NCBI RefSeq assembly: GCF_006345805.1
Contig: NC_043009.1
Span: 64,852,001 to 64,916,000 of the forward strand
Reading direction: 5' to 3'
DNA: 64,000 bases
From: Octopus sinensis
Lineage: Eukaryota
This document shows, one piece after another, positions 25,376-62,703 of the stretch (its first letter is position 1; each line of letters starts with the position of its first letter). The notes beneath the pieces are model-generated. The model was not told the DNA's origin. It searched no databases and was given only the letters and a program-made list of their open reading frames with translations. The translations under genes were made by a program, and so were the position numbers.

Positions 25376-25514
25376 CTGATTTATAGACAGCCATCGAATA
25401 AGAAGTTCCACAAAATTTGTCGTTACTTCCGTGACATTCTTCTTGACAAGCTGTACTGGTGTACCAGAGACCGAATTTATCATAATTGGACCCACAAGAA
25501 CAATCAACACCTTT
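25376..25514 (-). CDS. PAN-mucin-WSC gene, WSC3 second half (139 nt, phase 0-1): KGVDCSCGSNYDKFGLWYTSTACQEECHGSNDKFCGTSYSMAVYKS
   Basis: Acceptor ttcgtattccag and donor G|gtgaga. CxC...C...C.G...CG...VY WSC pattern. Confidence 0.9.
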
Positions 25515-26088
25515 CTGGAATACGAAATAAAGTTCATGTTAAATTTTTTGCTGTTGTTGTTGTTTAGGCCTTACCTGTGTCAATTCTAACCAAGTAGACT
25601 GTTGACGAAAGGCATTCCAGAAATGACCACCCTGCCATTTTGCATATCAGTAAGTACATTGTCATAATGTAATGTTCTTTATTTAAAATGACTGAGTGTA
25701 AATTAAATGAGATTTCATTGCTGTTTCAAAAGAGAGTGAGTCATCGCACAAAGGGTCAGATATACAATCTCTGCTTTATTTTTCTAAGATAGAAAAAAAC
25801 CCCACCTTGAAAGTGCTTTGACTACTATTGTTAGCGACTCAAGTAAGCTTTTAGGAATTCCCTCATTGATATGGAGGTAGCAGAACTTCGATGTTGTGTT
25901 TTTCATGTCTTTCCAGACCACATTAATGGCACAAGTAAAATGCTTGCAAATAAAACTCAACCGTCTCACATGTTTTGACAGTATTAGAATTTTCTGTTTG
26001 CACTGAAGAAATCTTCTTCGTCGAGTCATTCTTCTCAAGTAAGTATGTCAGATATCCATCATATTGAGGGATGTAGCCTTTCAGGAAA

Positions 26089-26505
26089 GGCAGCGAGCTG
26101 GCAGACACGTTAGCGCGCCGGGCGAAATGCTTAGCGGTATTTCGTCTGTCGTTACGTTCTGAGTTCAAATTCCGCCGAGGTCGACTTTGCCTGTCATCCT
26201 TTCGAGGCCTATTAAATAAGTACCAGTTACGCACTGGGGTCGATATAATCGACTTAATCCGTTTGTCTATCCTTGTTTGTCGTCTCTGTGTTTAGCCCCT
26301 AGTGGATAGTAAAGAAATAGGCATTTCGTCCGTCTTTACATTCTGAGTTCAAATTCCGCCGAGGTCGACTTCACCTTTCATCCTTTCGGGGTCGATAAAT
26401 AAAGTACCAGTTATGCACTGGGATCGATGTAATCGACTTAATCCGTTTGTCTGTCCTTGTTTGTCCCCTTTATGTTTAGCCCCTTGTGGGCAGTAAAGAA
26501 ATATA
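26089..26505 (+). mobile_element. SINE family B dimer
   Basis: Headed unit followed by a headless unit, joined at AAAGAAATAG|GCATTTCGTC. Confidence 0.85.
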
Positions 26506-27569
26506 TAGCCTTTCAGGAAAAGTTGCCTCCTTTCTCAATGATAAAAAAAATAAGTCAAGTATTTGTTGAGAGGATCTCCGGTTTATTTGATAGAATCAAG
26601 CTGGCTGCATCGCTTCTTTACTCCGATGCATCCATCACACACGTTTAATCCGTCTTCTCTGTATTCAAAAAAAAAAAAAAGGTATCAATCGTTTTCCCAT
26701 CTCTATGTTTCTTATAAAATAATATAAAGATATGCTTTAGCCAAAGCAGGAACGAGCAGTGCTCACGATCTTTTTACAGGACGTCTGGGACTGACGAGGA
26801 GAAAGGGACAAGTTGACGTCATAAAGGAGACTTGGCCCTGATGCTTGAAACAAAGAGGTGTCTGTCTTTAGAGGAGTTAACATTATTACATGCATCAGGG
26901 TACCCAAAGGCCATGTTGTAATATTCAGCAGGGTTACATTTTAACACCATCGTAAAACTCTGAGTAACGTTTTGTCAAGTTTTCAGTTTTTTACGATGCT
27001 ATGCCAGGCTGTGGCTCTCGTGGCTTCTGATCTTAACTGATTGGGAGTGTTATCATGTACATTTTCTCATGGTATAAAATGATTGCTACAACAAATATTC
27101 TGCTCGATACCACAGATTTGCTTGTCAGTTGCTTGACCATAACAAGTTGAGCAAGTCCCTTAGTGGCTGACGATATGTGCATCTCTGATGAGGAGCAGAA
27201 GTAGTGGGCGAGATTCATATATTGAGAGGAATTCTTTGGGGTTTGAATAATCCGCCTCTGGAAACATGGGTGTTTCGTTCATCATACTTAAACAACCCTC
27301 ATTCGGGGAGCTTTTGAGTGGGATGGACTACTCGACTTGAAGAAAATTCTAACTGGGCCCCACCTGTTTGCCTTGATATGAGATGGCCACCTCGCGCACA
27401 TATGGTTGTGATGCATGTGCCTGGTGTACCCTTATCAGACGGGTAGTAAATGATAGGCACCCTCGGATTTGTATATTTGTACCCCAGTGTCACTTTGATG
27501 GCATGCACTACGCTCTCACTCAATGATGATAATAATTATTATTATTTAAAATTTTGGTTCAAGGCTAGC

Positions 27570-27765
27570 AATTTCGTAGGAGTGGGGTGGGGGAGTAAGT
27601 CGACTACATTAACCTCAGTGCGTAACTGGTACTTATTTCATCGAACCCCGAAAGGATGAAAGGCAAAGTCGACCTCGGTGGAATTTGAACTCAGAATGTA
27701 AAGACGGACAAAGTGCTGGTAAGCATATTGCCCGGCGTGCAAGCGGTTCAGCCAGCTGGCCGCCT
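27570..27765 (-). mobile_element. SINE family B
   Basis: GGATGAAAGGCAAAGTCGACCTCGGTGGAATTTGAACTCAGAA...CAGCTGGCCGCCTT. Confidence 0.8.
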
Positions 27766-28250
27766 TATAACAATAATAATAATGATAATAATAATAATAA
27801 TAATAATAATAAGTCTACGCGCGCGCGCGCACACACACACACTGACTGTTAAATTGTTGCTGACGTAATGTAATGAACCAAACAATAATTTTAGTTCATT
27901 TCAAATTACACCCGTCGTGTGGAGAAAAAAAAAACAAAATGTTTCTGATGCAGAAAGACAAGGGAGGCAACCTTGAAATCTGGGAGTAAATTTATTTCTT
28001 CGTAAGAACAGCGACAACTTCTCACGTTCCGTTCTTATTAGACCGTTCTTATTCTTATTAGAATATTTGAAAGCGACTGAGAGCCTTGGCAAACCAACAC
28101 AAACCGACATGACATAAATGAATGATTACTGCACGTGGCACTAATTGATATCTCTTCTAAAAGGTCAATTTGAAATATCGCCGCCCAAGCTTGTTAGCTC
28201 TGTGTTCTGGTACTTACGCATGAGTAAGAAATAGCTTAGCCGTGACTTAC

Positions 28251-28378
28251 CGTTAATCCTGCATATTTTTCTCCCTGATTTCCACAATATTTTCGGCAAG
28301 TTTCAATCGACATAATTGACCGCAACGAATATTTTGGCAAAACCGAATGGTGTCTAGTTTTGTAGCAGCCCACGAAAA
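28251..28378 (-). CDS. PAN-mucin-WSC gene, WSC3 first half (128 nt, phase 1-0): (V)FVGCYKTRHHSVLPKYSLRSIMSIETCRKYCGNQGEKYAGLT
   Basis: Acceptor tttctgcgcag and donor ACG|gtaagt. (F/Y)xGC...MS..TC..YC...YAGL WSC pattern. Confidence 0.9.
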
Positions 28379-28614
28379 CTGCGCAGAAATATTACCCCAA
28401 ATTTTGGAATTAGTTAATATGCAAGGTATAAAAAAAAAAAAAAAAAGGCAAAAGTTATCAATTCATTTCACAAAAGCAAAAAGCAAAAACAAAAAAAAAA
28501 AAAACAACAAAAACAAAACAAAAAACAACGTTTAATGAAGAGAAACAAAATATACTGAAATCGTTTCCTGAATTAAATACTTTATTTTCTGTTCTATATT
28601 TAAGAGATGAGGAA

Positions 28615-28795
28615 TTATTTACATTATTTACATTATTTATATTTGACAGATATTTGTCCTCATCTTGTTTGTTGTTAACACAGTTCCCCAAGACACCTGA
28701 TGACGGCTGGAGGGTATATCAACCGAAATGTTGTGTGAACAACAAACAAGATGAGGACAAATATCCATCAAATGTAAATAATGTACTTTATTTTC
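28615..28795 (+). mobile_element. Penelope-like inverted terminal structure with a hammerhead motif between about 50-bp inverted arms
   Basis: Arms ...GATATTTGTCCTCATCTTGTTTGTTGTTAACACA and TGTGTGAACAACAAACAAGATGAGGACAAATATC. Core ACAC-CTGATGA(28697)-C-GGCTG...CAACC-GAAA-TGTT-GTGT. Confidence 0.72.
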
Positions 28796-29064
28796 TATTT
28801 TAAGTCGTTTTCTTTTCTTTAATCAGGCGAGAAAGAAATTCTTTTACTTTATTTTTCATATTCAGGATTAAATTAGAGGAAGAATGGATGGGGCTGAGCA
28901 TAATCCTTTTCAGTACTCCTGTGCCTAGTGGAAGGTCAAAACGATCCTCAGAGTAGCGATTACTCCTGAATGTTTGCAACAATGTTGGAGTTACCCAATG
29001 GCCGGTTAGTGATGTTGAAGTAAGCGACCACGGGAACTTTCTCTCCGATCTGCTTCCACAAACT

Positions 29065-29592
29065 TTCCTCATAACTAGAAAGGGTATGGCCTGGTCAGCC
29101 TGTAATGACATGCATAAGATCTGGTCATCAAATCTAAGTAGAGACTTCAAACTTGAAATCTTCAAAGCCACAGTCGAACCAATTCTACTATATGGCTCAG
29201 AAACCTGGACGTTATCAAAGAAGTTTGAGAGGCGGTTGGATGGAACCTACACTCGCCTCCTTATGAGAGCTCAAAATCTCTCGTGGAAGCGCCATCCAAC
29301 CAAAATGCAAATATATGGGAAACTACCGCCTGTGTCATCTCTTGTGAAAGGTAAGAGAGTCCAGTTTGCTGGACATTGTTGTAGAGCTGAAAAAGAGGTA
29401 ATTTCTACTCTTCTCCTCTGGAAGCCATCTGCTCGCAATACCAGAGGGCGCACACTCTCCTACCCTGATGTAATCTCCAGGGATACAGGCATCCAGCAAC
29501 AGGACCTCCGTAATGCCATGATGGACCGTGAAGTCTGGCGTAGCATGGTAAATTCCATTGTCTCGACCACGATCGAACAATGATGATGATGA
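29065..29592 (+). mobile_element. RTE/RTE-X-type LINE 3' fragment with (TGA)n tail; short inverted RT-like segment at about 28860-29060
   Basis: EPILLYGSETWTL, VQFAGHC, RGR...YPDVI, MMDREVW, then stop and TGATGATGAT. Confidence 0.85.
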
Positions 29593-30019
29593 TAACTAAA
29601 ATTCCATTCCAAGAGCTTAACTCTGAGCGAGGTTACACTGAAGACACTAGCCCAAGGTGCTGAGCGCGAGTATTGAACCTGGGCTAAAATAAATATCGCT
29701 CCTGTTGTTTCAGAAGGATTAAGCTGTTCTTTACAACCGCTAAATCATTCCCATGGCACCTTTAAATGTTCCGTTTATTAGGAAATCAATATTGTTGAAG
29801 GGTTTACAACAAAAAGGGGACGGGGAATATACTATAAATTACAATAAAAAGGGGACGGGGAATATATTAAACGTGATTCTACTTACGAGAAGAGTATACG
29901 GGTTTCACTGAAATATAAAATGGAAAGTAAACATATAACATGATAGCTTTCATAAATGAGTCAAGGTAAAACGCTAATCCATATATCGAATAAGGGAATT
30001 ATTCACACACACACACACA

Positions 30020-31178: not shown

Positions 31179-31964
31179 ATTAGAAAATTATACAGAAACA
31201 GAACAGAAAATTTGAATAAAATGATAGAGATTCTCTCTGATGCATTATTTTATAGATAAATAATTTATTGTATTTCGGGATGGTCATTTTTGTTTTTCAT
31301 CAGCAAAACAATATTTCAATGAATACACCTTCGTCAGTGTTCATGTAATCTACAGCACTTTAATAAAAAATTTAAGGAAAATGTTAACCTTGCCAACCCC
31401 CAGCAATATTATCTTTATGTTTTACTCTGGCATTAAATTAAGAAATAAACATCACCAAATAGAAATGGTATTCCTCAACTTACGGTCGTCTGGTTCGATT
31501 TTAACTGAAACAAAAACAATAAACAAAATAATAAATAATATAAAATAAATAAATAAAATAAAATGAAATAAATAACTGGTAGAGTGGTTAGGGACAACAG
31601 CTTGAATACTCGGAGTTCAAATCCGAACGGAATCAATTTTGTTTTCTATTCTTTCAAGGCCAACAAATAAATAAAAGACCATCCCAGGGCAATGGATTAG
31701 CAGAATTGTTTGAGAACTGATTCAGATGATCGTGAGAGCCGTTTCTAAGCTTTACAATTTGAGTCCAACTTCCATGTAGGGACGATCCCTTGACTATAGG
31801 GAGGACAGTGCCCAACCCGTAGTTGACCAAACATGGAGGACGAGTAAGCCTGGAATCAATTTAAATAAACAAGTAATGGCGTGCTGAGACATTCATCCAG
31901 AAATACTTCGCTAACGGCCGAAGGAAAATGATAATAATAATAATAACGATAATGATAATGATTT

Positions 31965-33335: not shown

Positions 33336-33471
33336 CTGCACGGTAAACGGACATTGCTCTCTGTCCTCCACAAAACTGATGTTTATCTCCGGGGCATTTA
33401 AGATAGCATTGTTCGTCAGGGTAAAATTTCTCAGACGGGATAACGTTGAAACACAGACAAATTGTAGTGAT
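33336..33471 (-). CDS. PAN-mucin-WSC gene, WSC2 second half (136 nt, phase 0-1): ITTICLCFNVIPSEKFYPDEQCYLKCPGDKHQFCGGQRAMSVYRA
   Basis: Acceptor ctttcttttcatag and donor G|gtaggc. CxC...C...CPG...CGG...SVY. Confidence 0.92.
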
Positions 33472-33990: not shown

Positions 33991-34066
33991 CGCGAGCGCT
34001 TGCGTGCGCGCATGTGCGTGCCTCGCGTGCATGTATGTATATATTCACTTATACGTATGCACACAT

Positions 34067-34960
34067 ACTCTCTCTTTTACTCTTTTACTTGTTTCAGTCA
34101 TTTGACTGCGGCCATGCTGGAGCACCGCCTTCAGTCGAGCAAATCGACCCCGGGACTTATTCTTTGTAAGCCCAGTACTTATTCTATCGGTCTCTTTTGC
34201 CGAACCGCTATGTGACGGGGACGCAAACACACCAGCATCGGTTGTCAAGCAATGCTAGGGGGACAGACACAGACACACAAACACACACGCATACATATAT
34301 ATACATATATACGACAGGCTTCTTTCAGTTTCCGTCTACCAAATCCACTCACAAGGCATTGGTCGGCCTGGGGCTATAGCAGAAGACACTTGCCCAAGAT
34401 GCCACGCAGTGGGACTGAACCCAGAACCATGTGGCTGGTCAGCAAGCTACTTACCACACAGCCACTCCTGCGCCTCGCGCGCATGTATGTATATATTAAC
34501 TTATACGTATGCACACATATATATGTATTTCTACAAGCACACATGTGTGTATGTATTTTGTCAGTCATTTGACTGCGGCCATGCTGGATCACCGCTTTGA
34601 AGGGTTTTTTAGTCGAACAAATCGATCCCAGGGCTTATTTCTCAAGCTCAATACCCATTCCATCGCTCCGCTTTGCAGAACCGTTAGGTCATAAACACAC
34701 CAACACCGGTTGACAAGCGGTGGTATACACATATATAGATATATACATACATACATATATATATGTATGTATGTATGTGTGTGTGTGTGACTATATGACG
34801 GGCTTCTTTCATTTTCCGTCTACCAAATTCACTCACAAGGCTTTGGTTGGCCCGAGGCTATAGTAGAAGACACTTGCCCAAGGTGCCACGAGGTGGGACT
34901 GAACCCGGAACCATGTAGTTGATAAGCAAGCTTCTTACCACACAGCCACGCCTGCGCCTA
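34067..34960 (-). mobile_element. Two consecutive SINE family A copies (34067-34474 and 34560-34960)
   Basis: Both carry the head, CCTTGGGCAAGT core and tail blocks. Confidence 0.85.
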
Positions 34961-35703: not shown

Positions 35704-35831
35704 AATAGCCACAAATTTAAAACCTTTTTCTCCACAATGTCTTTTGCATGTGCCGGGAGTCATTTCGGAATGCTTCCATCTATGCATCAAATCACTGGAT
35801 TTAAACGACGCAATGGAACAACCAATGTAGT
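35704..35831 (-). CDS. PAN-mucin-WSC gene, WSC2 first half (128 nt, phase 1-0): (D)YIGCSIASFKSSDLMHRWKHSEMTPGTCKRHCGEKGFKFVAI
   Basis: Acceptor ttttattttctag and donor ATT|gtatgt. YIGC...MT...C..HC...GF.F WSC pattern. Confidence 0.92.
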
Positions 35832-37815: not shown

Positions 37816-38501
37816 TTTTATCTTTTTTTTAAATAGATAAGAATACACAGAAACAGAGGATAAATCAACCTATATAGAATACAGAAGACATTGTAGGATA
37901 CATACAGACACAATGCATTAGAATCCAGTGAATTTTTTTACAAAACGTAGAATTAATTTCTGATTGTTCGTTATTCGTTTTCAAAAGTGATCAACGTCGA
38001 TGATGGCCCTTCTTGAATGATATCAGTAACAGGCGATCGTAGAATCGGGTTTCCTCCGCATAGTTCGCCAGAAATCTAGTTTTCACTTTCGTTGGGTATC
38101 AAACCCCTAAAAACTTTCACTGAGGTTTTCAGACAGGCTGCTTACTCTCAACCAGGTGCAATGAACTTTTTAATACCGTTGCCTAAGTGAGGGCACACTG
38201 TTGCATGTAGAGATGTCATAAAGGGCCACTAGTGCAAACCGAGTGTCCGGTGGGAACCGGTGGCAGATGAGCAGTCCTGAAAAGAATTTGGCAGGGTCCC
38301 TACCAAAAGATCTTTCCCTCCTTGACACTTCATACTTCTGGAATTCATACAATACACTAAGGATATACAAAGACACTCGAGGATACATGGGGATTCAAAG
38401 ACAAATGGGACAGATCGGAATAAAAAGAAGCAAAAGGGAGTTTTTACCTTTGTGGTCTGCATGGCCGTCTGAAATGGAAAAACAATAAGATGATGATGAC
38501 G

Positions 38502-38555
<54 letters not shown>

Positions 38556-38629
38556 TAATAATAATAATAATTATAATAATAATAATAATAATTATAATAA
38601 TAATAATAATGATAATAATAATAATAATG

Positions 38630-38708
<79 letters not shown>

Positions 38709-38800
38709 TAATAATAATAATAATGATAATAATAATAATAATAATGATGATAATGATAATAATAATAATAATAATAATAATGATGATAATAATAATTATA

Positions 38801-38885
<85 letters not shown>

Positions 38886-38897
38886 TCATAATAATAA
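38502..38897. repeat. Long (TAA/TGA)n microsatellite, about 400 bp
   Basis: Direct reading. Confidence 0.95.
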
Positions 38898-38898
38898 T

Positions 38899-39185
38899 CA
38901 GGTTCACCATCCCTACAGGAAGTGCAAAAAATCGTATTAAGTGGAACGGCTCATGTACTGAGAAGAGCATTATCGTTGCGAAAACAACATCCTTCCATGA
39001 ATTTATTTATTTATTAATTTTTTAAATACATATTTTACCTGTGAATTTGTGTTTGTAATCTGGGCATGCACACAATGAGCTTCTCTGCCCTAGGAGTACG
39101 GAAAACACTGGGCGAGAAACGTTAGGAAAATTTGAAGAAAGAAGGGATAAAAAAAAAATAATAATAATAACAATAATAATAATAA
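38899..39185 (+). mobile_element. 3' end of an RLE-type non-LTR retrotransposon (R4/Dong-like) embedded in (TAA)n
   Basis: GSPSLQEVQKIVLSGTAHVLRRAL matches the QKxVLxGTAxILR end helix of RLE ORFs. Flanked by TAA repeats on both sides. A second 3' UTR copy lies at 60530-60635. Confidence 0.6.
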
Positions 39186-39741: not shown

Positions 39742-40035
39742 CTCCACTTACCTCCTGGGCCAAAGGATGAGCCTGCAAATATAAAAAAATATATACAGGA
39801 TTCATAAACATCATTCTAATAAAAATCATAATTATTACCACCACCACCACCACCAGCAGCACAACCACCAGCCCCACCAACAGCACCAGCACCAGCACCA
39901 GCACCAGCACCACCACCACCATTACTACCACAACAACGACGACCATGATCGTCACAACAAGATGGAGAATAAATTTGCGTAGTAAAGGAAGTATTTGTGG
40001 TTGATTAGCTGAAGATAGAAGTGAATTTCTTTTAC

Positions 40036-40171
40036 CTGAATGATAAACCGACAAAGAAGACACACCACCACAGATATCTTCGTTGTTTCCCGAACACTTG
40101 AGATTGCAGTCTTCCTCTTTTACCCGTCCAAATAAATCATAACTGTTTGCACAATAACAGTCTCCGGAATG
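40036..40171 (-). CDS. PAN-mucin-WSC gene, WSC1 second half (136 nt, phase 0-1): HSGDCYCANSYDLFGRVKEEDCNLKCSGNNEDICGGVSSLSVYHS
   Basis: Acceptor ttctgcctttccag and donor G|gtaaaa. Textbook GxCYC...C...CSGN...CGG...SVY. Confidence 0.94.
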
Positions 40172-40962: not shown

Positions 40963-42194
40963 AATGCTTAGCGGCATTTCCTCCGACTTGAAGTCGACTT
41001 TGCCTTTCATCCATTTGGGGCCGATAAAATAAGCACCCTTCCTTCAAAATTGCAGGTTTTGCGCCAAAATGTGAAACTATTGTCTGTAGACATTCTTTGG
41101 AGAAACTGAAAACAGCATAGAACCATCTTTTTATATGCAAGGAATATTTTTTGCCTCTTCCCACTTTACTGTTTCTCTCTCATTTCAACTTCTCTCCATT
41201 AACTACCTTGATCATGCTTTCCTTTGTCATTTCTCTCTCTCTCTCTCACCATCTCTCTCCGTCTCTCCCTCCCCCTCTCTCTCCCTCTCTTTCACTTTAT
41301 TATTCTCTTCCTTCCCAGAATTCTGCTTTCCAGAGCCCTTTCTCTCCCCAAGTGTGTTCCCTTTCCAATTTGCTATTCATACAGCCACTTCGATCAGCGT
41401 TATTCTTGTCTTTTTCCTATTGAATAATTAACACAAATAATTAACAGTTTACTTTCTTTCCTAATTGCACAATCATTACATTTTATTCTAATTCGGACGG
41501 CCTTGTTGTCATCCAGCTTTCTTTGCGCACTCATAATCTGGTTGATATCCTCTGACACTACGTATATATTGTCACGTGTTTTCTTTGTCGTAATCGAAAT
41601 TTCTAAACATTTTTCACTTCTCCAATATTCAATTAGAAAACCAAAATATTTTTCGTACGCTTTCTTATGTTCTTTCTCATGATATCATACACGTTTTTTT
41701 TATACATATGGATGTATATATATTTCTTTACTACCCACAAGGGGCTAAACATAGAGGAGACAAACAAGGACAAACAAATATGGATGTATATATGTGTATG
41801 TGTACGTGTGTGCGTATGCGTGGGTGGTTGTGAAGCTTTAAGTATTGTACTCCAGTGCCTGAGTCAAGTTATAGTTTCTTCTTTGGTAGAAGAGATTCGC
41901 CTAAGGTGCAGACAGATCGCATGTGCAATTATGGGATTGTAAAGCGAACTTGTTCACCAAACAACCCTCACAACTGTTACAGGGTTGCAGACTGCAAGTT
42001 TCTGAGATATGCAAGAAAATGTGGTTGAATAGATTTCAGTGCATCACTGTTGCTAATTCGGTCAAACACTGAAGCGACGAAAGCTGGCATCAATATTGGT
42101 ACCTGCAAGAATCGGCGCCGGTAGTCGCAGCAGAAAGAAGCAGCAGTCTTGCATTGCTGCTTGTCTCACGACCCACACGGTTCTGATGCACTCA

Positions 42195-43130: not shown

Positions 43131-43246
43131 CTGTAAATGTAATATGACAATTATTATCAGTCATGATAAAACTCCGAGTTTCGGATGCCTAGGTGGAAAG
43201 CCACCCGCGCCATCTCTTCAGTTATCTGGCCATCGGAAAAATGCTA

Positions 43247-43298
<52 letters not shown>

Positions 43299-43304
43299 GT
43301 GCTC

Positions 43305-51790: not shown

Positions 51791-51924
51791 TTCAAGTCCG
51801 GCAAATTTGTAACCTTTTGCTACACAATGCAATCTGCAAGACTTGATGGTCATCGATGGCGAGGATATTAAATCCCCTTGCATTGCTCTTCTGTGTAAGA
51901 AATCCTTGAAGCATCCAATGTAAC
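51791..51924 (-). CDS. PAN-mucin-WSC gene, WSC1 first half (134 nt, phase 1-0): (S)YIGCFKDFLHRRAMQGDLISSPSMTIKSCRLHCVAKGYKFAGLE
   Basis: Acceptor tttctttactaaacag and donor GAA|gtaagt. YIGCFKD...MT...C..HC...GYKFAGLE is canonical WSC. Confidence 0.95.
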
Positions 51925-52049: not shown

Positions 52050-52760
52050 CAAAAGTGAGATGTGCAAGTTCTGTGAGAAATCAAGGCAGTCACTAAGGCG
52101 TGTGTGGCATTGCTGCGGAGTTCTTCTCTTGGAGACACAATCAAGTAATCATAGGTCACTTGCACGGCTGTATTGTAACTTGTAATGAAAAGTGGATTTT
52201 GTACAATAATAAAAAACAAAAAAAAAAACGTTCTTTGCAGTGGTTGGACCAAAATTAAGCACCGAAAACCTTCCCGAAAGCAGAGCTCATCAAGAAGAAA
52301 GTTATGGTGACTGTTTGGTGGTGTGGTGATATACTCATCCACCATAACTTAAAACTCGGAAAAACCATTACTGCAGAAACATATTACCATGAAATCGCCA
52401 GAATGAACGAAAAACGGCTACTCCTCCGTCCCAGACTGGTCAACAGAAGAGGGCCAATCATTTTTCATGACAATGCTCGACAACACTTTTCAGTAACGAC
52501 GCTCCAGAAGTTGAAGGAATTTGTCTACGAAGTTCTTTCATATCCAGCTTATTGCCCAGGCTTTTCTCCTACCGACTACCACTTTTTCAAGCACTTTGAA
52601 GACTTCCTGCGAGAGGAGTTCAAGAATCGAACCGATGTTGAAGGTGCGCTGAAAGAGTTCATCAGCTCCAGAACTCCAGATTTTTATGTTACCAAAATAA
52701 ACGAACTTGTGACTCGTAATATTGTGATGAATTTCATGTTTCAAAACGTTGCTTACTTTT
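52050..52760 (+). mobile_element. Mariner transposase relic
   Basis: TCNEKWILY, KKVMVTVWW, FHDNARQH, YCPGFSPTDYHFF. Confidence 0.88.
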
Positions 52761-52820
52761 TGCTCAGCCTGATGTATATATATTAATAAAACACAAATAT
52801 TTCATGTGTTTGTAAACATA

Positions 52821-54016
52821 CGAAGGTCAGCTGAAAAGTTCATTGGCTGACTAAGATACTCTCATGAAATGTGACCAAATTTTTCAATACAGTCTCCCTT
52901 GTGGTCCTCACTCTTCTTCCATCGTTGCTGCAGTTCTTGGATCTCAACGGGGAAGAAGCTTTCAACCTGTTGCTCAAAAAGTCATCAACAACAGATATGA
53001 CGCCATCATCAATGTGAAACTGATTCCCAGTCAAGGGAACAGATGATAGTCACATGGGTCCAAATCGGGAGAATAAGGAGCGTGATCAACCAGTTAAAAG
53101 CCAGTCATGCACAGAAGCCATTGAAAACAAGGACTTGTGTGCCGAGCCTTTTTGTGAGTTTTCCCGGGCATTCGGTCTTCATAACCTTTCATAACCTTTC
53201 AAAACTGCCTAATCAAGCTGACATAGTACTCTTCATTTCCTTCCTGAAAAACTGAAGCCATCAACTTCTCTGAAGATGAAACGACCCTGGCTTTTTTCGG
53301 AGCAGGTGAGAAAGGGTGCTTTCGCTGCATGGATTGTCTCTTCGTCTCTGGCTCAAAGTGATGAACTCAATACTCATCTTGGGTAAAGAAACGTTCATGG
53401 AAACCAGCTGGATCTGCCTCAAACGATGTCAGATTTTTCTGTGATGTGATCAGCCTGGTGCGAATTTGATCAGCAGTCAGAAGGCATGGCCCCCACCACC
53501 GAGCATAAACCTTCGTCATGCTAAGCTCATTGTGCAGAATATTCTCAACTCTTTCACAGGATATGCTAATAGTATTGACTATTTGATTTACAGTCAATCG
53601 CCTGTCACCCATCACTATATGGTGATTACGATCAGTGTTTTACTCGGGGGTGACAGTTGCAGAACGTTCAGGGCTTGGGTCATCTCCTCCTAAATTCAGC
53701 TGCTCCCTGTTGCATCATTGATAAAGCCGGAGCATCGACCCCTATTGTAGCAACCATGTCAGCATGAATGTTGTTGGGGAAGCTAAACCCTTTTCCAGCA
53801 GGGACTTGATAACACCACCATGCCAAATTTTGTCGATTTTTGAGAGAAGTCGTTACTAGTAACATTTGAAGTCTTCTTTGAACAGTCAGATGTCAGTTTA
53901 CCTGGAAAGAAACAATGCAGTTATCCATAAGAAGGGTTGAAATTCATACATGCAAGATTTCACAGCTCTAGCATCACTCCTTCGAAACCGGCCAATGAAC
54001 TTTCAGTCCACCCTCG
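52821..54016 (-). mobile_element. Full-length decayed mariner (about 1.2 kb) with both TIRs
   Basis: Left TA|CGAAGGTCAGCTGAAAAGTTCATTGGC; right GCCAATGAACTTTCAGTCCACCCTCG. Minus-strand DRRLTV...ILHNELSMTKVYARW...LT...TQDE. Confidence 0.85.
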
Positions 54017-54048
54017 AAAGTTGATCATTTAAAAATATTAATACTTAC

Positions 54049-57000
54049 TTGGAGTCACAATAATTGGTGTTGTTGACTGCTCTGTAGAGGGCGTTGTTGA
54101 CTGCTCTGTAGAGGGCGTTGTTGATTGTTCTGTTGAGGCCGTTGTTGACTGCTCTGTAGAGGGCGTTGTTGACTGCTCTGTAAAAGGTGTTGTCTGTTCT
54201 GTAGAGGGCGTTGTTGATTGTTCTGTAAAAGGTGTTGTCTGTTCTGTAGAGGGCGTTGTTGATTGTTCTGTAGAGGGCGTTGTTGTCTGTTCTGTAGAGG
54301 GCGTTGTTGATTGTTCTGTAGAGGGCGTCGTTGACTGTTCTGCTGAAGGCGTTGTTGACTGTCCTGTAGAGGGCGTCGTTGACTGTTCTGCAGAGGGCGT
54401 TGTTGACTGTTCTGCTGAAGGCGTTGTTGACTGTCCTGTAGAGGGCGTTGTTGACTGTTCTTCTGTAGAGGGCGTTGTTGACTGTCCTGTAGAGGGCGTC
54501 GTTGACTGTTCTGCAGAGGGCGTTGTTGACTGTTCTGCTGAAGGCGTTGTTGACTGTCCTGTAGAGGGCGTCGTTGACTGTTCTGCAGAGGGCGTTGTTG
54601 ACTGTTCTGCTGAAGGCGTTGTTGACTGTCCTGTAGAGGGCGTCGTTGACTGTTCTGCAGAGGGCATTGTTGACTGTTCTGCTGAAGGTGTTGTTGACTG
54701 TCCTGTAGAGGGCGTCGTTGACTGTTCTGCAGAGGGTGTTGTTGACTGTTCTTCTGTAGAGGGCGTTGTTGACTGTCCTGTAGAGGGCGTCGTTGACTGT
54801 TCTGCAGAGGGCGTTGTTGACTGTTCTGCTGAAGGCGTTGTTGACTGTCCTGTAGAGGGCGTTGTTGACTGTTCTGCTGAAGGCGTTGTTGACTGTCCTG
54901 TAGAGGGCGTCGTTGACTGTTCTGCAGAGGGCGTTGTTGACTGTTCTGCTGAAGGCGTTGTTGACTGTCCTGTAGAGGGCGTCGTTGACTGTTCTGCAGA
55001 GGGCGTTGTTGACTGTTCTGCTGAAGGCGTTGTTGACTGTCCTGTAGAGGGCGTCGTTGACTGTTCTGCAGAGGGTGTTGTTGACTGTTCTTCTGTAGAG
55101 GGCGTTGTTGACTGTCCTGTAGAGGGCGTCGTTGACTGTTCTGCAGAGGGCGTTGTTGACTGTTCTGCTGAAGGCGTTGTTGACTGTCCTGTAGAGGGCG
55201 TTGTTGACTGTTCTGCTGAAGGCGTTGTTGACTGTCCTGTAGAGGGCGTCGTTGACTGTTCTGCAGAGGGCGTTGTTGACTGTTCTGCTGAAGGCGTTGT
55301 TGACTGTCCTGTAGAGGGCGTCGTTGACTGTTCTGCAGAGGGCGTTGTTGACTGTTCTGCTGAAGGCGTTGTTGACTGTCCTGTAGAGGGCGTCGTTGAC
55401 TGTTCTGCAGAGGGCGTTGTTGACTGTTCTGCTGAAGGTGTTGTTGACTGTCCTGTAGAGGGCGTCGTTGATTGTTCTGCCGAGGGCGTTGTTGATTGTC
55501 CTGTAGAAAGCGTAGACTGTTCTGATGGCATGCTTGAAAGTGTTGTCTTTTCAATAGAAATGGTTGTTTCTTGAGAGGTTTTTTGTGCTGGTTGTGTGAG
55601 ACATATAGGTGGTTCCGTGGTAGTCGTCGGTTGAGCTGTAGAGGGCGTTGCATGTGCTGTTGGTTCTATACAAGAGACAGAGGTAGGAGTAGTTGATTTG
55701 TCGGTAGAGGGCGTTGTTGTCAATGGTGTTGAGTGCATTGTAGATTGTTGTGCTGTTGACTGTTCTGCACTGGGTGAAATAGTTTGAGTTATACAAGGCA
55801 TAGTTGACTCAGGTGTAGATAGCGTTGTTGACTCTCCTGTAGATGGCGATGTCGACTCTCCTGTAGACGGCGTTGTTGACTCTCCTGTAGACGGCGTTGT
55901 TGACTCTCCTGTAGACGGCGTTGTTGACTCTCCTGTATACGGTGTTGTCGACTCTCCTGTAGACGGCGTTGTTGACTCTCCTGTAGACGGTGTTGTCGAC
56001 TCTCCTGTATAAGGTGTTTCTGACTCTCCTGTAGATGGCGCTGTTGACTCTCCTGTAGACGGCGTTGTTGACTCTCCCGTATACGGTGTTGCTGACTCTC
56101 CTGTAGATGGCGCTGTTGACTCTCCTGTAGACGGCGTTGTTGACTCTCCTGTATACGGTGTTGTTGACTCTCCTGTATAAGGTGTTGCTGACTCTCCTGT
56201 AGATGGCGCTGTTGACTCTCCTGAAGACGGCGTTGTTGACTCTCCTGTATACGGTGTTGCTGACTCACCTGTAGATGGCGCTGTTGACTCTCCTGTAGAC
56301 GGCGTTGTTGACTCTCCTGTAGACGGCGTTGTTGACTCTCCTGTAGACGGTGTTGTTGACTCTCCTGTATAAGGTGTTGCTGACTCTCCTGTAGACGGCG
56401 CTGTTGACTCTCCTGAAGACGGCGTTGTTGACTCTCCTGTATACGGTGTTGCTGACTCTCCTGTAGATGGCGCTGTTGACTCTCCTGTAGACGGCGTTGT
56501 TGACTCTCCTGTAGACGGCGTTGTTGACTCTCCTGTATACGGTGTTGTCGACTCTCCTGTAGACGGCGTTGTTGACTCTCCTGAAGACAGCGTTGTTGAC
56601 TCTCCTGTATACGGTGTTGCTGACTCACCTGTAGATGGCGCTGTTGACTCTCCTGTAGACGGCGCTGTTGACTCTCCTGTAGATGGCGTTGTTGACTCTC
56701 CTGTAGACGGCGTTGTTGACTCTCCTGTATAAGGTGTTGCTGACTCTCCTGTAGATGGCGCTGTTGACTCTCCTGTAGACGGCGTTGTTGACTCTCCTGT
56801 AGACGGTGTTGTCGACTCTCCTGTATAAGGTGTTGCTGACTCTCCTGTAGATGGCGCTGTTGACTCCCCTGAAGACGGCGTTGTTGACTCTCCTGTAGAC
56901 GGCGTTGTTGACTCTCCTGTATACGGTGTTGTCGACTCTCCTGTAGACGGCGTTGTTGACTCTCCTGTATACGGTGTTGTCGACTCTCCTGTATAAGGTG

Positions 57001-58353
57001 TTGCTGACTCTCCTGTAGATGGCGCGGTTGACTCTCCTGTAGACGGCGTTGTTGACTCTCCTGTATACGGTGTTGTTGACTCTCCTGTATAAGGTGTTGC
57101 TGACTCTCCTGTAGATGGCGCTGTTGACTTTCCTGAAGACGGCGTTGTTGACTCTCCTGTAGACGGCGTTGTTGACTCTCCTGTATACGGTGTTGCTGAC
57201 TCTCCTGTAGGTGGCGCTGTTGACTCTCCTGTAGACGGCGTTGTTGACTTTCCTGTAGACGGCGTTGTTGACTCTCCTGTATACGGTGTTGTCGACTCTC
57301 CTGTAGACGGTGTTGTTGATTCTCCTGTATACGGTGTTGCTGACTCTCCTGTAGATGGCGCTGTTGACTCTCCTGTAGACGGCGTTGTTGACTCTCCTGT
57401 ATACGGTGTTGTTGACTCTCCTGTATAAGGTGTTGCTGACTCTCCTGTAGATGGCGCTGTTGACTCTCCTGTAGACGGTGTTGTTGACTCTCCTGAAGAC
57501 GGTGTTGTTGACTCTCCTGTAGACGGCGTTGTTGACTCTCCTGTAGACGGTGTTGTCGACTCTCCTGTATAAGGTGTTGCTGACTCTCCTGTAGATGGCG
57601 CGGTTGACTCTCCTGTAGACGGCGTTGTTGACTCTCCTGTATACGGTGTTGTTGACTCTCCTGTATAAGGTGTTGCTGACTCTCCTGTAGATGGCGCTGT
57701 TGACTCTCCTGAAGACGGCGTTGTTGACTCTCCTGTAGACGGCGTTGTTGACTCTCCTGTATACGGTGTTGCTGACTCTCCTGTAGATGGCGCTGTTGAC
57801 TCTCCTGTAGACGGCGTTGTTGACTCTCCTGTATACGGTGTTGTTGACTCTCCTGTATAAGGTGTTGCTGACTCTCCTGTAGATGGCGCTGTTGACTCTC
57901 CTGTATACAGTGTTGTTGACTCTCCTGAAGACGGTGTTGTTGACTCTCCTGTAGACGGCGTTGTTTCCTCTCCAGTAGACGGCGTTGTGGACTCTCCTGT
58001 AGACGGTGTTGTTGACTCTCCCGTAGACGGAGTTGTCGACTCTTCTATCGGCGTTGTTGACTCTCCTGTAGACGGTGTTGTTGTTTCTCCTGTAGACGGC
58101 GTTGTCGACTCATGTGTAGATGGCATTGTTGACTCGGGTATCGATGGTTTTGTGGACTCTGGCGCTGACGGTGCTGTTGACTCTTCTGTAGAGAGTGTTG
58201 TTGTTTGTTCTGGTGTCTCCGTTACTGGTGTTGTTGTTTGCTCTGTAGAAGTTGTTGCTGTTTGCGTTGAAGCTGGTGTTGTTGACGCTTGTGGAGAGGG
58301 TGTTGTCGATTCACTAAAGCGTGTAGTAGCAGTTGTTGTAGTTTTAACCTTCT
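54049..58353 (-). CDS. PAN-mucin-WSC gene, giant PTS (mucin) exon, 4305 nt = 1435 codons, phase 1-1
   Basis: Uninterrupted Ser/Thr/Pro/Glu-rich frame with acceptor ttttctttttctttag and donor A|gtaagt. Block A (GESTTPST-type, about 95 units, about 58100-55824), a 3-Cys linker, and block B (EQSTTPSA/GQSTTPST, about 60 units, about 55525-54066). Confidence 0.95.
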
Positions 58354-58783: not shown

Positions 58784-58994
58784 TCTCTTTTACTCTTTTA
58801 CTCTTTTACTTGTTTCAGTCATTTGACTGCGGCCATGCTGGAGCACCGCCTTTAGTCGGTTAAATCGACCCTGGGACTTATTCTTTGTAAGCCCAGTACT
58901 TATTCTATCGGTCTCTTTTGCCGAACCGCTAAGTGACGGGGACGTAAACACACCAGCAATGCTAGGGGGACAAACACAGACACACAAACACACG

Positions 58995-59026
<32 letters not shown>

Positions 59027-59195
59027 CATATATACGACAGGCTTCTTTCAGTTTCCGTCTACCAAATCCACTCACAAGGCATTGGTCTGTCCGGGGCTAT
59101 AGCAGAAGACACTTGCCCAAGATGCCACGTAGTGGGACTGAACCCGCAACCATGTGGTTGGTTAGCAAGCTACTTACCACACAGCCACTCCTGCG
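58784..59195 (-). mobile_element. SINE family A, full length
   Basis: All diagnostic blocks are present. Confidence 0.88.
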
Positions 59196-60745: not shown

Positions 60746-60973
60746 GGTTGAGTTCATAATAATTCCATCCTTTGTTTTTCACTTTAAGTTTGTTAGTCTG
60801 GTGTGTGGCAGAAGACAAAGAACATTTTCGTTTCCGGGAGTTAAATTCGACCGAACGGCATTCTGGATGTTCCTGACATGCGCGTTTGCACTCCTCGAGG
60901 TTGGTTCGTTTGATTGTATGAAAACTCTTCTTCTTCTTTAAGCGTGCTCCCAGCAACGTATTTATGCCATTTA
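60746..60973 (-). CDS. PAN-mucin-WSC gene, PAN/Apple domain 2 (228 nt, phase 1-1): (L)NGINTLLGARLKKKKSFHTIKRTNLEECKRACQEHPECRSVEFNSRKRKCSLSSATHQTNKLKVKNKGWNYYELN
   Basis: C-x3-C-x5-C-x-S-x-x-F-x6-C-x-L...YY PAN pattern with donor C|gtgagt. The acceptor at 60974 is the best phase-compatible AG but is less certain. Confidence 0.85.
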
Positions 60974-61410: not shown

Positions 61411-61482
61411 AATTATTCATTTTTAATATTAGTTTATATTGACGTTACGTTCACTCACTCACTCACTCATTCAATCACTCAC

Positions 61483-61519
<37 letters not shown>

Positions 61520-61562
61520 TAATCAAGCAAGCAATCAATCAACTGAATGTTTTGTGACTTAC

Positions 61563-61796
61563 GGTTCTCCAGTTGGTAGAAAGTGGTTTTCTTTTTCTTC
61601 TGCAGAACTTCGGTGGAAGCATCAACCCGAAAGAGACGACATTGTCTCTTCTTTCTGGTGAACTCAAAAGCTCTGCAGTTTTTCATTTCAAGACACTTTG
61701 AAGCACAGGCTTGAGGATACCTGCTACGCATGGTTTTCAATGGTTGAACATCGATCGAAGCATGTTTGACCTCTATGAACCAGTCCGTTGGAGCTT
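61563..61796 (-). CDS. PAN-mucin-WSC gene, PAN/Apple domain 1 (234 nt, phase 1-1): (E)APTDWFIEVKHASIDVQPLKTMRSRYPQACASKCLEMKNCRAFEFTRKKRQCRLFRVDASTEVLQKKKKTTFYQLEN
   Basis: Same four-Cys PAN spacing as domain 2. Acceptor tatattgtag and donor C|gtaagt. Confidence 0.9.
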
Positions 61797-61809
61797 CTAC
61801 AATATACAT

Positions 61810-61980
61810 AACATACAAATGTACATACGTGCATACATACATACATACATACATACATACATACATACTACATACATACATATACATACATACATACATA
61901 CACCATACATACATACATACATGCATGCATACATACATACATGCATACATACATCCATGCATACATACATACATACATAC

Positions 61981-62011
<31 letters not shown>

Positions 62012-62012
62012 C
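61810..62012. repeat. (CATA)n microsatellite
   Basis: Direct reading. Confidence 0.95.
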
Positions 62013-62637
62013 ATGTGTGTGTCAGTGGTTAGAGCGTCGGGGTCACACTCATCCTGGGGCCCGCCTTTCACTCGAACAAATCGACCCCTAGACTTATTCT
62101 TTGTAAGCCTAGTGCTTATTCTATCGGCAACTTTTGCCGAACCGCTAGGTTACGCAGACGTAAACACACCAACATCGGTTGTAAAGCGATGGTGGGGCAC
62201 AAACACACACACACACTCTCTCTCTTTCTCCCTTACTCTATACGTATCTGTCGTCAACAGAATACTTTCGAAGGTATGTTTGTTGAAAAACAACAAAACT
62301 ACCGGTAAAATTCCCCCATTTTTTTTTCTTATTTTTATTTTTAATTGTCCTAAAATTTTCGTTGCGTCTTGCAATTTTACCGGTAAGTGTCTTACATAAT
62401 AAGGCACAAAAAGAAAATGACTCTCCCCAGACACAACAGAATATGCTTCAACGCAGGAACTCATATAAAGAATCTTGCAAACCAAATCCCAAAACTAAAC
62501 AACCGATAAGACGACATCTTTTCGTACTGAGGCAGCAAATCAAAAAAGGATTATACGAGAAATAAGAACAAAATATCAAACGAGAAAAGACAAAAAAAAA
62601 AAAAGGAACAATAAAACGAAAATGAAAACAAACTCAC

Positions 62638-62703
62638 CCCTATCTTCGGTCATATGTGTATGGACATATTCGGCGGCAACTAGGGCAGAAAGCGAAGATA
62701 AAA
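62638..62703 (-). CDS. Probable upstream exon of the PAN-mucin-WSC gene encoding the end of a signal peptide (66 nt, phase 1-1): (x)[21 protein letters not shown]
   Basis: Acceptor tttctgtttccttggtttaaag and donor G|gtgagt. Hydrophobic run ending in V-A-A resembles a signal-peptidase site and joins PAN1 in frame. The ATG exon was not found. Confidence 0.6.

What the first reader, a model, noticed from the sequence alone, without database searches (positions are those of the whole stretch)
25376..62703. Hidden 37-kb gene: secreted PAN-PAN-[1435-aa PTS]-WSC-WSC-WSC mucin, a lectin-like module at both ends of a glycan rod
Seen in sequence: ten minus-strand exons with GT-AG sites whose phases chain without error (1-1, 1-1, 1-1, 1-1, 1-0, 0-1, 1-0, 0-1, 1-0, 0-1), giving about 1878 codons. 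Each PAN domain has 4 Cys and each reconstructed WSC domain has all 8 Cys. Six of the exons are absent or masked in the ORF track. Established knowledge: PAN/Apple domains mediate protein or carbohydrate binding. WSC domains bind carbohydrate in fungal cell-wall sensors and occur in animal Kremen, polycystin-1 and WSCD1/2. Classical gel-forming mucins polymerise through VWD/C8/TIL and cystine-knot domains, none of which I find here, nor a transmembrane segment. Inference: a soluble mucin that may crosslink or bind targets through terminal lectin-like modules, for example in skin or sucker mucus, egg coat, salivary secretion or microbial recognition. I do not recognise this architecture as a characterised protein.
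Basis: partly seen in the sequence, partly recalled or inferred. Interest (0 to 1): 0.88.

Follow-up and report, generated by a model that had tools for sequence, protein, structure and literature searches.

The report
Octopus PAN–mucin–WSC secreted glycoprotein gene
The window holds a real, intact, many-exon octopus gene for a secreted protein with two PAN domains, a 1,435-residue mucin-like rod and three WSC domains; a short-linker sister gene with the same plan is already in public octopus annotations but has never been studied, so this is a moderately interesting new family member, not a new kind of protein.

Summary
All ten minus-strand exons exist with AG/GT borders, the stated phases and 5,634 nt (1,878 codons). 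Pfam calls PAN_1 twice (3e-24) and WSC three times (9e-47), and the Cys counts are as stated.

The single-gene reading is strongly supported. An annotated but uncharacterised Octopus bimaculoides gene, LOC106869731 (XP_014771072.2), encodes signal peptide–PAN–PAN–short PTS–WSC×3. It aligns colinearly with the window model (31% identity, E 3e-71) and has the same exon plan and intron phases. In the window gene the PTS exon has grown from 162 to 4,305 nt, as about 170 copies of a 24-nt unit.

I add:
- three candidate 21-nt linker micro-exons;
- a tentative ATG exon;
- a likely stop 16 codons past WSC3, with AATAAA about 370 nt further on;
- an RBX1 gene that bounds the 3′ side.

I found no transmembrane segment, VWD domain or fourth WSC.

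Function is inferred, not shown: a secreted, acidic, O-glycosylated rod with a basic PAN pair at one end and polysaccharide-binding-type WSC modules at the other, acting as a matrix or mucus tether. The architecture is not unprecedented, no orthologue above 50% identity was found, and there is no expression evidence.

The parts
63787..63841 (-). Tentative first coding exon: ATG plus MYNFLSLFLLLACSLSQR plus 1 nt (phase 0 to 1). The donor is weak (GTGGCG).
   Evidence: This is the only signal-peptide-like ATG exon with a phase-1 donor upstream of 62703. It is not a repeat within the window. It joins in frame. The paralogue also splits its signal peptide over two small exons.
62638..62703 (-). 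An alternative acceptor lies at 62679.
   Evidence: It corresponds to the 36-nt phase 1-1 exon 2 of LOC106869731. There is no in-frame ATG before the upstream stop.
61563..61796 (-). PAN1 exon, 234 nt, phase 1-1, 4 Cys
   Evidence: PAN_1 E 3.5e-11 for this domain alone. Homologous exon in L001 at 38454-38681.
60746..60973 (-). PAN2 exon, 228 nt, phase 1-1, 4 Cys
   Evidence: The full HMMER search with this exon retrieved octopus PAN proteins and the paralogue P0155.
54049..58353 (-). PTS (mucin-like) exon, 4,305 nt, phase 1-1. Array A, mostly TGESTTPS-type, lies at about 55817-58069. A unique spacer with 3 Cys lies at about 55517-55864. Array B, AEQSTTPS/TGQSTTPS-type, lies at about 54086-55504.
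   Evidence: No Pfam family matches. It sits at the same position as the 162-nt PTS exon of the paralogue.
51791..51924 (-). WSC1 first half-exon, phase 1-0
   Evidence: half-domain HMM E 2.9e-22
40036..40171 (-). WSC1 second half-exon, phase 0-1
   Evidence: E 4.6e-20
39752..39772 (-). Candidate 21-nt linker micro-exon (adds GSSFGPG), phase 1-1
   Evidence: ttgcag|...|gtaagt. It lies in the same intron as the paralogue's 21-nt linker exon.
35704..35831 (-). WSC2 first half-exon, phase 1-0
   Evidence: E 2.2e-17
33336..33471 (-). WSC2 second half-exon, phase 0-1
   Evidence: E 2.4e-21
31484..31504 (-). Candidate 21-nt linker micro-exon (VKIEPDD), phase 1-1
29887..29907 (-). Candidate 21-nt linker micro-exon (KPVYSS), phase 1-1. 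It may be an alternative to the previous one or an addition to it.
28251..28378 (-). WSC3 first half-exon, phase 1-0
   Evidence: E 2.4e-18
25326..25514 (-). WSC3 second half-exon, probably the terminal exon. Read-through adds GEIDSFNLLPVSFFRK and the stop TAA at 25326-25328.
   Evidence: The paralogue stops two codons past the homologous point. There is no further WSC or PAN exon before RBX1.
24950..24955 (-). AATAAA, a candidate polyadenylation signal about 370 nt after the read-through stop

Best explanation
This is one intact protein-coding gene of an octopod (Octopus or a close relative), about 38.5 kb long on the minus strand. It encodes a secreted protein of about 1,900 residues: a signal peptide split over two small exons, two PAN/Apple domains, a 1,435-residue Pro/Thr/Ser/Glu-rich tandem-repeat rod, three WSC domains joined by short linkers, and a short tail with no membrane anchor. 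It is a divergent paralogue of the annotated but unstudied octopus gene LOC106869731, which has the same domain order and the same exon plan. The difference is that the single linker exon has expanded about 27-fold through duplication of a 24-nt (8-residue) unit. That expansion turns a compact five-domain protein into a mucin-sized one.

Shown here: the exon structure, the domain identities, the repeat structure, the charge layout (PAN pair pI about 9.9, WSC part pI about 8.5, rod with 157 Glu), the absence of a TM/VWD/ZP domain, and the homology and shared gene plan with the paralogue.

Inferred: the rod is densely O-glycosylated and extended, roughly 0.3-0.4 micrometres. The WSC triplet binds a polysaccharide. 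The basic PAN pair binds a protein or an acidic glycan. Together the molecule would tether or crosslink two different partners in an apical matrix, cuticle lining or mucus. It may also self-associate, through its basic heads binding acidic rods or through three central cysteines.
For: Gene model: the AG/GT borders and phase chain hold, and ATG-to-TAA gives a 5,802-nt open frame when all candidate exons are joined. Domains: PAN_1 at 3e-24 and WSC at 9e-47. The closest solved WSC is in Kremen1 (E 3.6e-10). The closest solved PAN is the HGF N domain, but weakly. Paralogue: P0155 is XP_014771072.2. Pfam finds PAN_1 twice and WSC three times in it. It aligns colinearly with the window model at E 3e-71 and ends at the position aligned with the window's KSGE. 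Its locus L001 rebuilds exactly into 13 exons with the same phases, including a single 1-1 PTS exon and WSC domains split at the same point. One gene rather than two: the PTS-to-WSC1 intron is only 2.1 kb, is mostly mariner-type transposon remains, and holds no signal-peptide exon. Coding status of the PTS exon: the period is a multiple of 3, only one frame is open, and third-position entropy is highest. 3′ limit: RBX1 exon 1 lies at 13708-13815 on the same strand. Family-level half-domain HMMs find only the six known WSC half-exons. AATAAA follows the read-through stop. No TM: the highest hydrophobic stretch outside the N-terminus lies inside WSC2. WSC as a carbohydrate module in octopus: LOC115209445 is GH10 plus five WSC domains. 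Taxon: the closest PAN relatives and the only proteins with the same architecture are from Octopus. Interspersed repeats are 83-95% identical to an O. bimaculoides chromosome.
Against: No transcript or peptide evidence was available, so exon use, PTS inclusion, the first exon and the 3′ end are all predictions. The only ATG exon found has a weak donor (GTGGCG). The true first exon may lie outside the window, since the paralogue's first two introns are 7 and 21 kb. WSC2 has lost the conserved AGL[EQ] and GN.Y motifs, and WSC3 has CGT in place of CGG, so binding may be altered. No orthologue above 50% identity was seen in databases that hold three Octopus proteomes. That leaves conservation, and therefore function, untested. 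No WSC protein appears in the held supplements of an octopus skin-mucus proteome. The ligands of animal WSC and PAN domains vary, and in Kremen the WSC domain takes part in protein contacts.
Confidence: 0.68

Rival explanations
1. The gene is real, but the giant PTS exon is a cassette or variable exon. The main product would then be a protein of about 460 residues, PAN-PAN-WSC×3, like the paralogue. The repeat array would be a recently expanded coding minisatellite with little function of its own.
For: The PTS exon is phase 1-1, so skipping it keeps the frame. The paralogue works with a 54-residue linker. Two other frames of the array also carry long open stretches, as expected of a minisatellite. 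LET-653 isoforms differ in PTS length through splicing (PMC4970718).
Against: The exon has a very strong acceptor (a long pyrimidine tract followed by TTTAG) and a GTAAGT donor. Only the coding frame is fully open over 4.3 kb, and third-position variation is highest. The array has two diverged sub-arrays and a unique spacer, which argues against a very recent expansion.
Confidence: 0.12
2. It is a decaying or unexpressed duplicate: a gene copy without a working start or promoter.
For: There is no ATG in the second signal-peptide exon, and a (GATA)n array lies directly upstream. The only ATG exon candidate has a poor donor. Conserved WSC motifs are degenerate in WSC2 and WSC3. No orthologue was found in three Octopus proteomes.
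Against: There are 5.6 kb of CDS over at least ten exons with no stop or frameshift. All 32 domain cysteines are kept. All splice sites are intact. The paralogue also places its ATG on a separate small exon far upstream.
Confidence: 0.1
3. The protein continues past WSC3 through the GTGAGA donor into unseen 3′ exons, such as a TM anchor or another module. It would then be cell-surface bound rather than soluble.
For: The donor at 25375 is a good match to consensus and sits at the position used by the other two WSC modules. An O. sinensis isoform of the paralogue splices on to a fourth WSC. 11.5 kb remain before RBX1.
Against: No PAN or WSC exon and no convincing phase-1 exon with a TM-like stretch lies between 13.9 and 25.4 kb. 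The O. bimaculoides paralogue stops at the homologous point. AATAAA follows the read-through stop.
Confidence: 0.07
4. There are two neighbouring genes: a PAN-PAN-PTS gene ending at the stop three codons past the PTS donor (TPSKY*), and a separate WSC×3 gene.
For: Read-through of the PTS donor reaches a stop at 54038-54040. Phase-1 compatibility is common among extracellular module exons, so it is weak evidence on its own.
Against: The paralogue joins exactly these parts in one annotated product. The 2.1-kb gap is mostly transposon remains and has no signal-peptide exon in phase 1. The WSC1 exon starts at an acceptor in phase 1, not at an ATG.
Confidence: 0.03

Closest known systems
Octopus bimaculoides LOC106869731 (XP_014771072.2 / UniProt A0A0L8HMG8, 'WSC domain-containing protein') and its O. 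sinensis counterparts (LOC118765861; 'WSC domain-containing protein ARB_07867 isoform X2')
   Same: They share the order signal peptide, PAN, PAN, PTS linker, WSC×3. The alignment is colinear (31% identity, E 3e-71). The exon plan and intron phases are the same, including the split signal peptide, the single 1-1 PTS exon and WSC domains split at the same residue. The product ends just after the last WSC, with no TM.
   Different: The linker is 54 residues (162 nt) against 1,435 residues (4,305 nt). The two are only paralogue-level similar. One O. sinensis isoform has a fourth WSC. None of these proteins has been studied.
C. elegans LET-653 (PAN-PAN, PTS region, ZP domain), an apical-matrix protein
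   Same: It is secreted, has two N-terminal PAN domains and an O-glycosylated PTS region, and has no TM. Its PAN domains bind a luminal matrix, and its PTS length varies between isoforms (PMC4970718).
   Different: The C-terminal module is ZP, with the PTS inside it, not WSC. LET-653 has a furin site. No sequence relationship beyond the PAN fold was tested.
Fungal Wsc1/Slg1-type cell-wall sensors
   Same: They combine a WSC domain with a long, O-glycosylated Ser/Thr-rich rod. The WSC domain is thought to contact wall polysaccharide (PMC9024836, listed; otherwise my own knowledge).
   Different: They have a single N-terminal WSC, a TM helix and a signalling tail, and no PAN. In the window protein the order is reversed (WSC at the C-terminus) and no TM was found.
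Kremen1 (Kringle-WSC-CUB-TM)
   Same: It is the best solved-structure match for the WSC domains (E 3.6e-10, with the full 8-Cys pattern aligned).
   Different: It is a single-pass receptor with Kringle and CUB domains, and its WSC takes part in protein contacts. It has no PTS and no PAN.
Gel-forming mucins (MUC2/MUC5AC/MUC19 type)
   Same: They have a very long tandem-repeat PTS domain encoded by one large exon.
   Different: The window product has no VWD/C8/TIL/cystine-knot domains. The mucin named in the octopus skin-mucus proteome is a 'mucin-19-like' protein, a different entry.
Octopus GH10 xylanase with five WSC domains (LOC115209445 / LOC106882324)
   Same: It has related WSC modules in the same genus (Pfam).
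   Different: Its WSC domains are appended to a glycoside hydrolase. It has no PAN and no PTS rod.

Membership tests
PAN/Apple domain (Pfam PF00024) | Profile score above the curated cut-off | tested here: met
   85.1 bits against a cut-off of 21.4, with two stretches. PAN1 alone scores 43.2 bits.
PAN/Apple domain (Pfam PF00024) | Core pattern of four cysteines per domain | tested here: met
   Four Cys in each exon product (translation). They align with the HGF N-domain cysteines.
WSC domain (Pfam PF01822) | Profile score above the curated cut-off, full-length matches | tested here: met
   157.6 bits against a cut-off of 27.8. There are three stretches, the best covering profile positions 1-82 of 82.
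WSC domain (Pfam PF01822) | Eight conserved cysteines per domain | tested here: met
   All eight are present in each of the three copies. WSC2 and WSC3 have lost some non-Cys motifs.
Mucin-type (PTS) domain | Long tandem-repeat region dominated by Ser/Thr/Pro | tested here: met
   1,436 residues, 65.5% S+T+P, about 175 units that are mostly 8 residues long.
Mucin-type (PTS) domain | Dense O-glycosylation of the repeats | not testable with these tools
   This needs protein chemistry and is inferred from composition only.
Gel-forming mucins | N-terminal VWD/C8/TIL assemblies and a C-terminal cystine knot | tested here: not met
   Pfam on the N-terminal, PTS and C-terminal parts returns only PAN and WSC above their curated cut-offs.
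Octopus PAN-PAN-PTS-WSCn family (LOC106869731 type) | Same domain order with colinear full-length homology | tested here: met
   BLASTP E 3e-71 over residues 7-434 of the query against 30-517 of the paralogue.
Octopus PAN-PAN-PTS-WSCn family (LOC106869731 type) | Shared exon plan and intron phases | tested here: met
   Exact reconstruction of the paralogue's 13 exons compared with the window model.
Fungal Wsc sensors | Transmembrane helix and cytoplasmic tail after the Ser/Thr rod | tested here: not met
   No TM-like stretch lies outside the N-terminus. None was found in the candidate downstream exons either.
LET-653-type ZP matrix proteins | ZP domain | tested here: not met
   No ZP hit in Pfam scans of the spliced product.
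Secreted protein | Cleavable N-terminal signal peptide starting at an ATG | tested here: inconclusive
   A hydrophobic [10 protein letters not shown] exon and a candidate MYNFLSLFLLLACSLS exon exist. The donor is weak and no signal-peptide predictor or transcript was available.

The most novel reading that the evidence does not exclude
An unannotated, octopod-specific mucin that builds or anchors a hydrated layer without any VWD or cystine-knot polymerisation. It would use two different terminal binding modules instead: a basic PAN pair and a WSC triplet related to those on an octopus xylanase. These heads would link, for example, a chitin- or polysaccharide-based lining to another matrix or microbial partner. 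Self-association through basic heads on acidic rods, or through three central cysteines, is also possible. This would be a second, lectin-based route to mucin networks.
Probability: 0.2. Interest if true: 0.6.

Novelty: new member of a known kind. Interest (0 to 1): 0.35.

Why it matters
The finding shows that a careful reading of raw sequence can recover a long, repeat-rich, multi-exon gene that the searched proteomes of three Octopus species do not contain. It also defines a small octopus family, PAN-PAN-PTS-WSCn, that nobody has studied. If the giant-linker member is expressed, it is a candidate structural component of an octopus surface layer such as sucker or gut lining, egg coat or mucus. 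It would be a natural test case for how linker length tunes a two-headed matrix protein. The biological question is of interest mainly to cephalopod and extracellular-matrix specialists and does not open a long-standing problem.

Tried and rejected
- The word-indexed protein search with the spliced PAN+WSC query found only one weak metagenomic WSC protein. The paralogue appeared only in the full HMMER search.
- tblastn of each domain and family-level half-domain HMMs against all six frames found no further PAN or WSC exon.
- A scan for phase-1 exons with TM-like stretches between RBX1 and WSC3 gave nothing convincing. One hit at 22880 is a CTG/CTT microsatellite product.
- A scan for a signal-peptide exon inside the PTS-WSC1 intron found none.
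- Literature searches for PAN+WSC+mucin, WSC in cephalopods or molluscs, the NCBI names and the accession numbers found nothing on this family.
- A spittlebug foam paper and an oyster mantle paper mention WSC only in passing.
- The octopus skin-mucus proteome supplements contain no WSC entry.
- An RBX1 query, meant as a control for the presence of the source species, returned bivalve best hits and no octopus RBX1, so the exact species was not identified.
- The first attempts to rebuild the paralogue's CDS failed until its extra small exons were found.
- Structure prediction was not run, because spliced sequences are not accepted and the Pfam evidence was already decisive.

Full report
**1. What is in the sequence**

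Reading the flanks gave exact borders:
- 62638-62703
- 61563-61796 (PAN1)
- 60746-60973 (PAN2)
- 54049-58353 (PTS)
- 51791-51924 and 40036-40171 (WSC1)
- 35704-35831 and 33336-33471 (WSC2)
- 28251-28378 and 25376-25514 (WSC3)

Each exon has AG before it and GT after it. The phases are 1-1 four times, then (1-0, 0-1) three times. The sum is 5,634 nt, or 1,878 codons, with no stop. Pfam gives PAN_1 at E 3e-24 (two stretches) and WSC at E 9.2e-47 (three full-length stretches). The cysteine counts, 4 per PAN and 8 per WSC, are as stated.

**2. The PTS exon**

Tandem Repeats Finder reports a 24-nt period with about 169 copies. The product is 1,436 residues: 31% Thr, 22% Ser, 12% Pro, 11% Glu and only 9 Lys+Arg. 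It has three parts:
- a 5′ array of TGESTTPS-type units;
- a unique spacer of about 115 residues with three cysteines;
- a 3′ array of AEQSTTPS/TGQSTTPS units.

A minisatellite can be open by accident. Here, however, only the proposed frame lacks stops, against 6 and 8 stops in the other two. Variation among units is also highest at third codon positions, at 0.47-0.53 bits against 0.16-0.29. No Pfam family matches the exon.

**3. The key comparison**

The word-indexed search with the spliced query found almost nothing. A full HMMER search with the PAN2 exon returned 318 proteins. An HMM of the three window WSC copies picked out exactly one of the best 150, P0155.

P0155 is XP_014771072.2 / A0A0L8HMG8, 'uncharacterized protein LOC106869731' of Octopus bimaculoides, with O. 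sinensis counterparts. Its architecture is signal peptide, PAN, PAN, a linker of about 54 residues rich in Thr, Ser and Lys, and WSC×3, and it ends two residues after the last WSC. It aligns colinearly with the window model at 31% identity and E 3e-71.

I rebuilt its CDS exactly from its locus L001 as 13 exons:
- ATG exon (37 nt, phase 0 to 1);
- second signal-peptide exon (36 nt, 1-1);
- PAN1 (1-1), PAN2 (1-1) and PTS (162 nt, 1-1);
- then (1-0, 0-1) for each WSC;
- 21-nt 1-1 linker exons between the WSC modules.

This is the same plan as in the window. The single-gene reading is therefore well supported, and the window gene is a paralogue whose linker exon grew from 162 to 4,305 nt.

**4. 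Refinements to the model**

(a) *Linker micro-exons.* I scanned the whole window, both strands, for YYNYAG-N(12-39, multiples of 3)-GTRAG with an open frame and a pyrimidine tract. This gave five hits. All three 21-nt hits lie in the two inter-WSC introns, at 39752-39772, 31484-31504 and 29887-29907. They are unique sequence with cag|...|gtaagt borders. They very probably match the paralogue's linker exons.

The only ATG exon with a phase-1 donor in the remaining 1.3 kb is 63787-63841 (MYNFLSLFLLLACSLSQR). Its donor is weak, so it is tentative. The true exon may lie outside the window.

(c) *3′ end.* RBX1 exons lie on the same strand at 13708-13815, 7398-7430 and 2557-2622. The gene must therefore end above 13.9 kb. 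No further PAN or WSC exon exists there, and no convincing TM exon either. Read-through of the last donor gives GEIDSFNLLPVSFFRK and a stop at 25326-25328, with AATAAA at 24950-24955.

With all candidates joined, the model runs from ATG to TAA over 5,802 nt, or 1,933 residues.

**5. One gene or two?**

The PTS-to-WSC1 intron is 2.1 kb, shorter than several introns inside the WSC domains. It is mostly mariner-type remains and holds no signal-peptide exon. Together with the paralogue, this makes two genes unlikely.

Skipping of the 1-1 PTS exon cannot be excluded without transcripts. Its splice sites are strong.

**6. How it probably works**

Shown here:
- no TM-like stretch outside the N-terminus;
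- a basic PAN pair (pI about 9.9), a mildly basic WSC part (pI about 8.5) and a rod with 157 Glu;
- related WSC modules attached five times to a GH10 xylanase in Octopus, which fits a polysaccharide-binding role in this genus.

From established knowledge:
- mucin-type PTS repeats are densely O-glycosylated and extended;
- fungal WSC domains contact wall polysaccharides (PMC9024836);
- the PAN domains of LET-653 bind a luminal matrix (PMC4970718).

Inference: this is a secreted rod of about 0.3-0.4 micrometres with two different binding heads, acting as a tether or crosslinker in an apical matrix, cuticle lining or mucus. No tissue can be named. The held supplements of one skin-mucus proteome contain no WSC entry.

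**7. Taxon and annotation status**

The closest PAN relatives are uncharacterised multi-PAN proteins of O. sinensis, O. bimaculoides and O. vulgaris. Interspersed repeats in the window are 83-95% identical to an O. bimaculoides chromosome. The source is therefore an octopod, but the exact species was not determined.

No protein above about 44% identity to the PAN2 exon was returned, and the profile search found only paralogues. No orthologous gene model is therefore present in the searched collections. 'Hidden' is fair with that caveat.

**8. Comparison and novelty**

The architecture is not unprecedented. The short-linker form is in RefSeq and UniProt, though no paper mentions it. Outside the family:
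- the nearest in design is LET-653 (PAN-PAN-PTS, then ZP instead of WSC);
- fungal Wsc sensors share the WSC-plus-rod idea but have a TM and a tail, which were tested here and not found;
- Kremen1 is the nearest solved WSC;
- gel-forming mucin features are absent.

I file it as a new member of a known but uncharacterised family, distinguished by a mucin-scale linker. Interest is moderate.

Noticed in passing
window 13708-13815, 7398-7430, 2557-2622 (minus strand): These are the first three coding exons of an RBX1 (RING-box protein 1) orthologue: MAAAMEID...KKRFEVKK, WNAVALWAW and [18 protein letters not shown]. The rest lies beyond the window start. The best database relatives were bivalve RBX1 proteins, and no octopus RBX1 was returned.
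   Followed up: partly
window 18100-18233 (+): A U4 spliceosomal snRNA match above Rfam's gathering score (49.9 bits against 46, full model length). It lies between the mucin-like gene and RBX1 and could be a gene or a pseudogene.
   Followed up: no
window 8606-10836 (+) and 10861-11581: A LINE-type ORF with a reverse-transcriptase domain (RVT_1, E 6.5e-32) plus a PHD-like finger. It is followed by a GC-rich tandem array that reads as repeated 'TDGAFTCHRHGARQSWQ'-like units on the minus strand.
   Followed up: partly
window 52304-52786 (+) and about 52840-53870 (-): Mariner-type transposase remains in both orientations (Transposase_1, E 8.6e-5). They fill most of the 2.1-kb intron between the PTS exon and WSC1.
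   Followed up: partly
window 29086-29583 (+), 43185-43673 (+): Two ORFs that look like C-terminal tails of LINE reverse transcriptases, inside introns of the gene.
   Followed up: no
window e.g. 58793-59047, 34045-34248, 62036-62164, 16840-17004, 7811-7945, 2753-2983: Many copies of one short interspersed repeat, which reads '...SGSAKETDRISTGLTKNKSRGRF...' in one frame. It is often flanked by (CA)n/(TA)n microsatellites. Related copies occur in the O. bimaculoides locus L001.
   Followed up: no
window 55793-55795, 55670-55672, 55601-55603 (minus strand): Three cysteines, an odd number, lie in the unique spacer between the two PTS arrays. They could form inter-chain disulfides.
   Followed up: no
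window 35704-35831 / 33336-33471 (WSC2) and 25376-25514 (WSC3): WSC2 has FVAII..CLCFNVI where the family has YAGL[EQ]..C.C.N.Y. WSC3 has CGT in place of the family's CGG. All cysteines are kept, so the fold is probably retained while the binding surface may have changed.
   Followed up: partly
P0275 / P0278-P0281 (Octopus sinensis LOC115209445, O. bimaculoides LOC106882324, O. vulgaris CAI9719249): Octopus proteins of about 900-950 residues combine a GH10 endo-xylanase domain with five WSC domains. This is an animal glycoside hydrolase carrying WSC modules in the way microbial enzymes carry binding modules.
   Followed up: partly
P0122, P0123, P0125-P0128 (Octopus spp.): This is a large octopus expansion of multi-PAN proteins, with up to 21 PAN_1 domains plus Sushi repeats in one 2,643-residue protein. 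All are annotated as uncharacterised, and they are the closest relatives of the window's PAN2 domain.
   Followed up: partly
L001 56767-56787, 85836-85856; P0273: The paralogue uses 21-nt linker micro-exons between WSC modules. An O. sinensis isoform splices past the O. bimaculoides stop to add a fourth WSC, so module number varies within the family. A further WSC-encoding gene lies on the opposite strand just downstream (L001 98745-101061).
   Followed up: partly
window 62740-62870, 63340-63445, 38400-38970, 42150-42490: Long microsatellites lie next to or inside the gene. A (GATA)n array sits directly upstream of the second signal-peptide exon. (GGT)n(AGT)n, (ATT/ATA)n and a GC-rich triplet array lie in introns or the 5′ region.
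   Followed up: no
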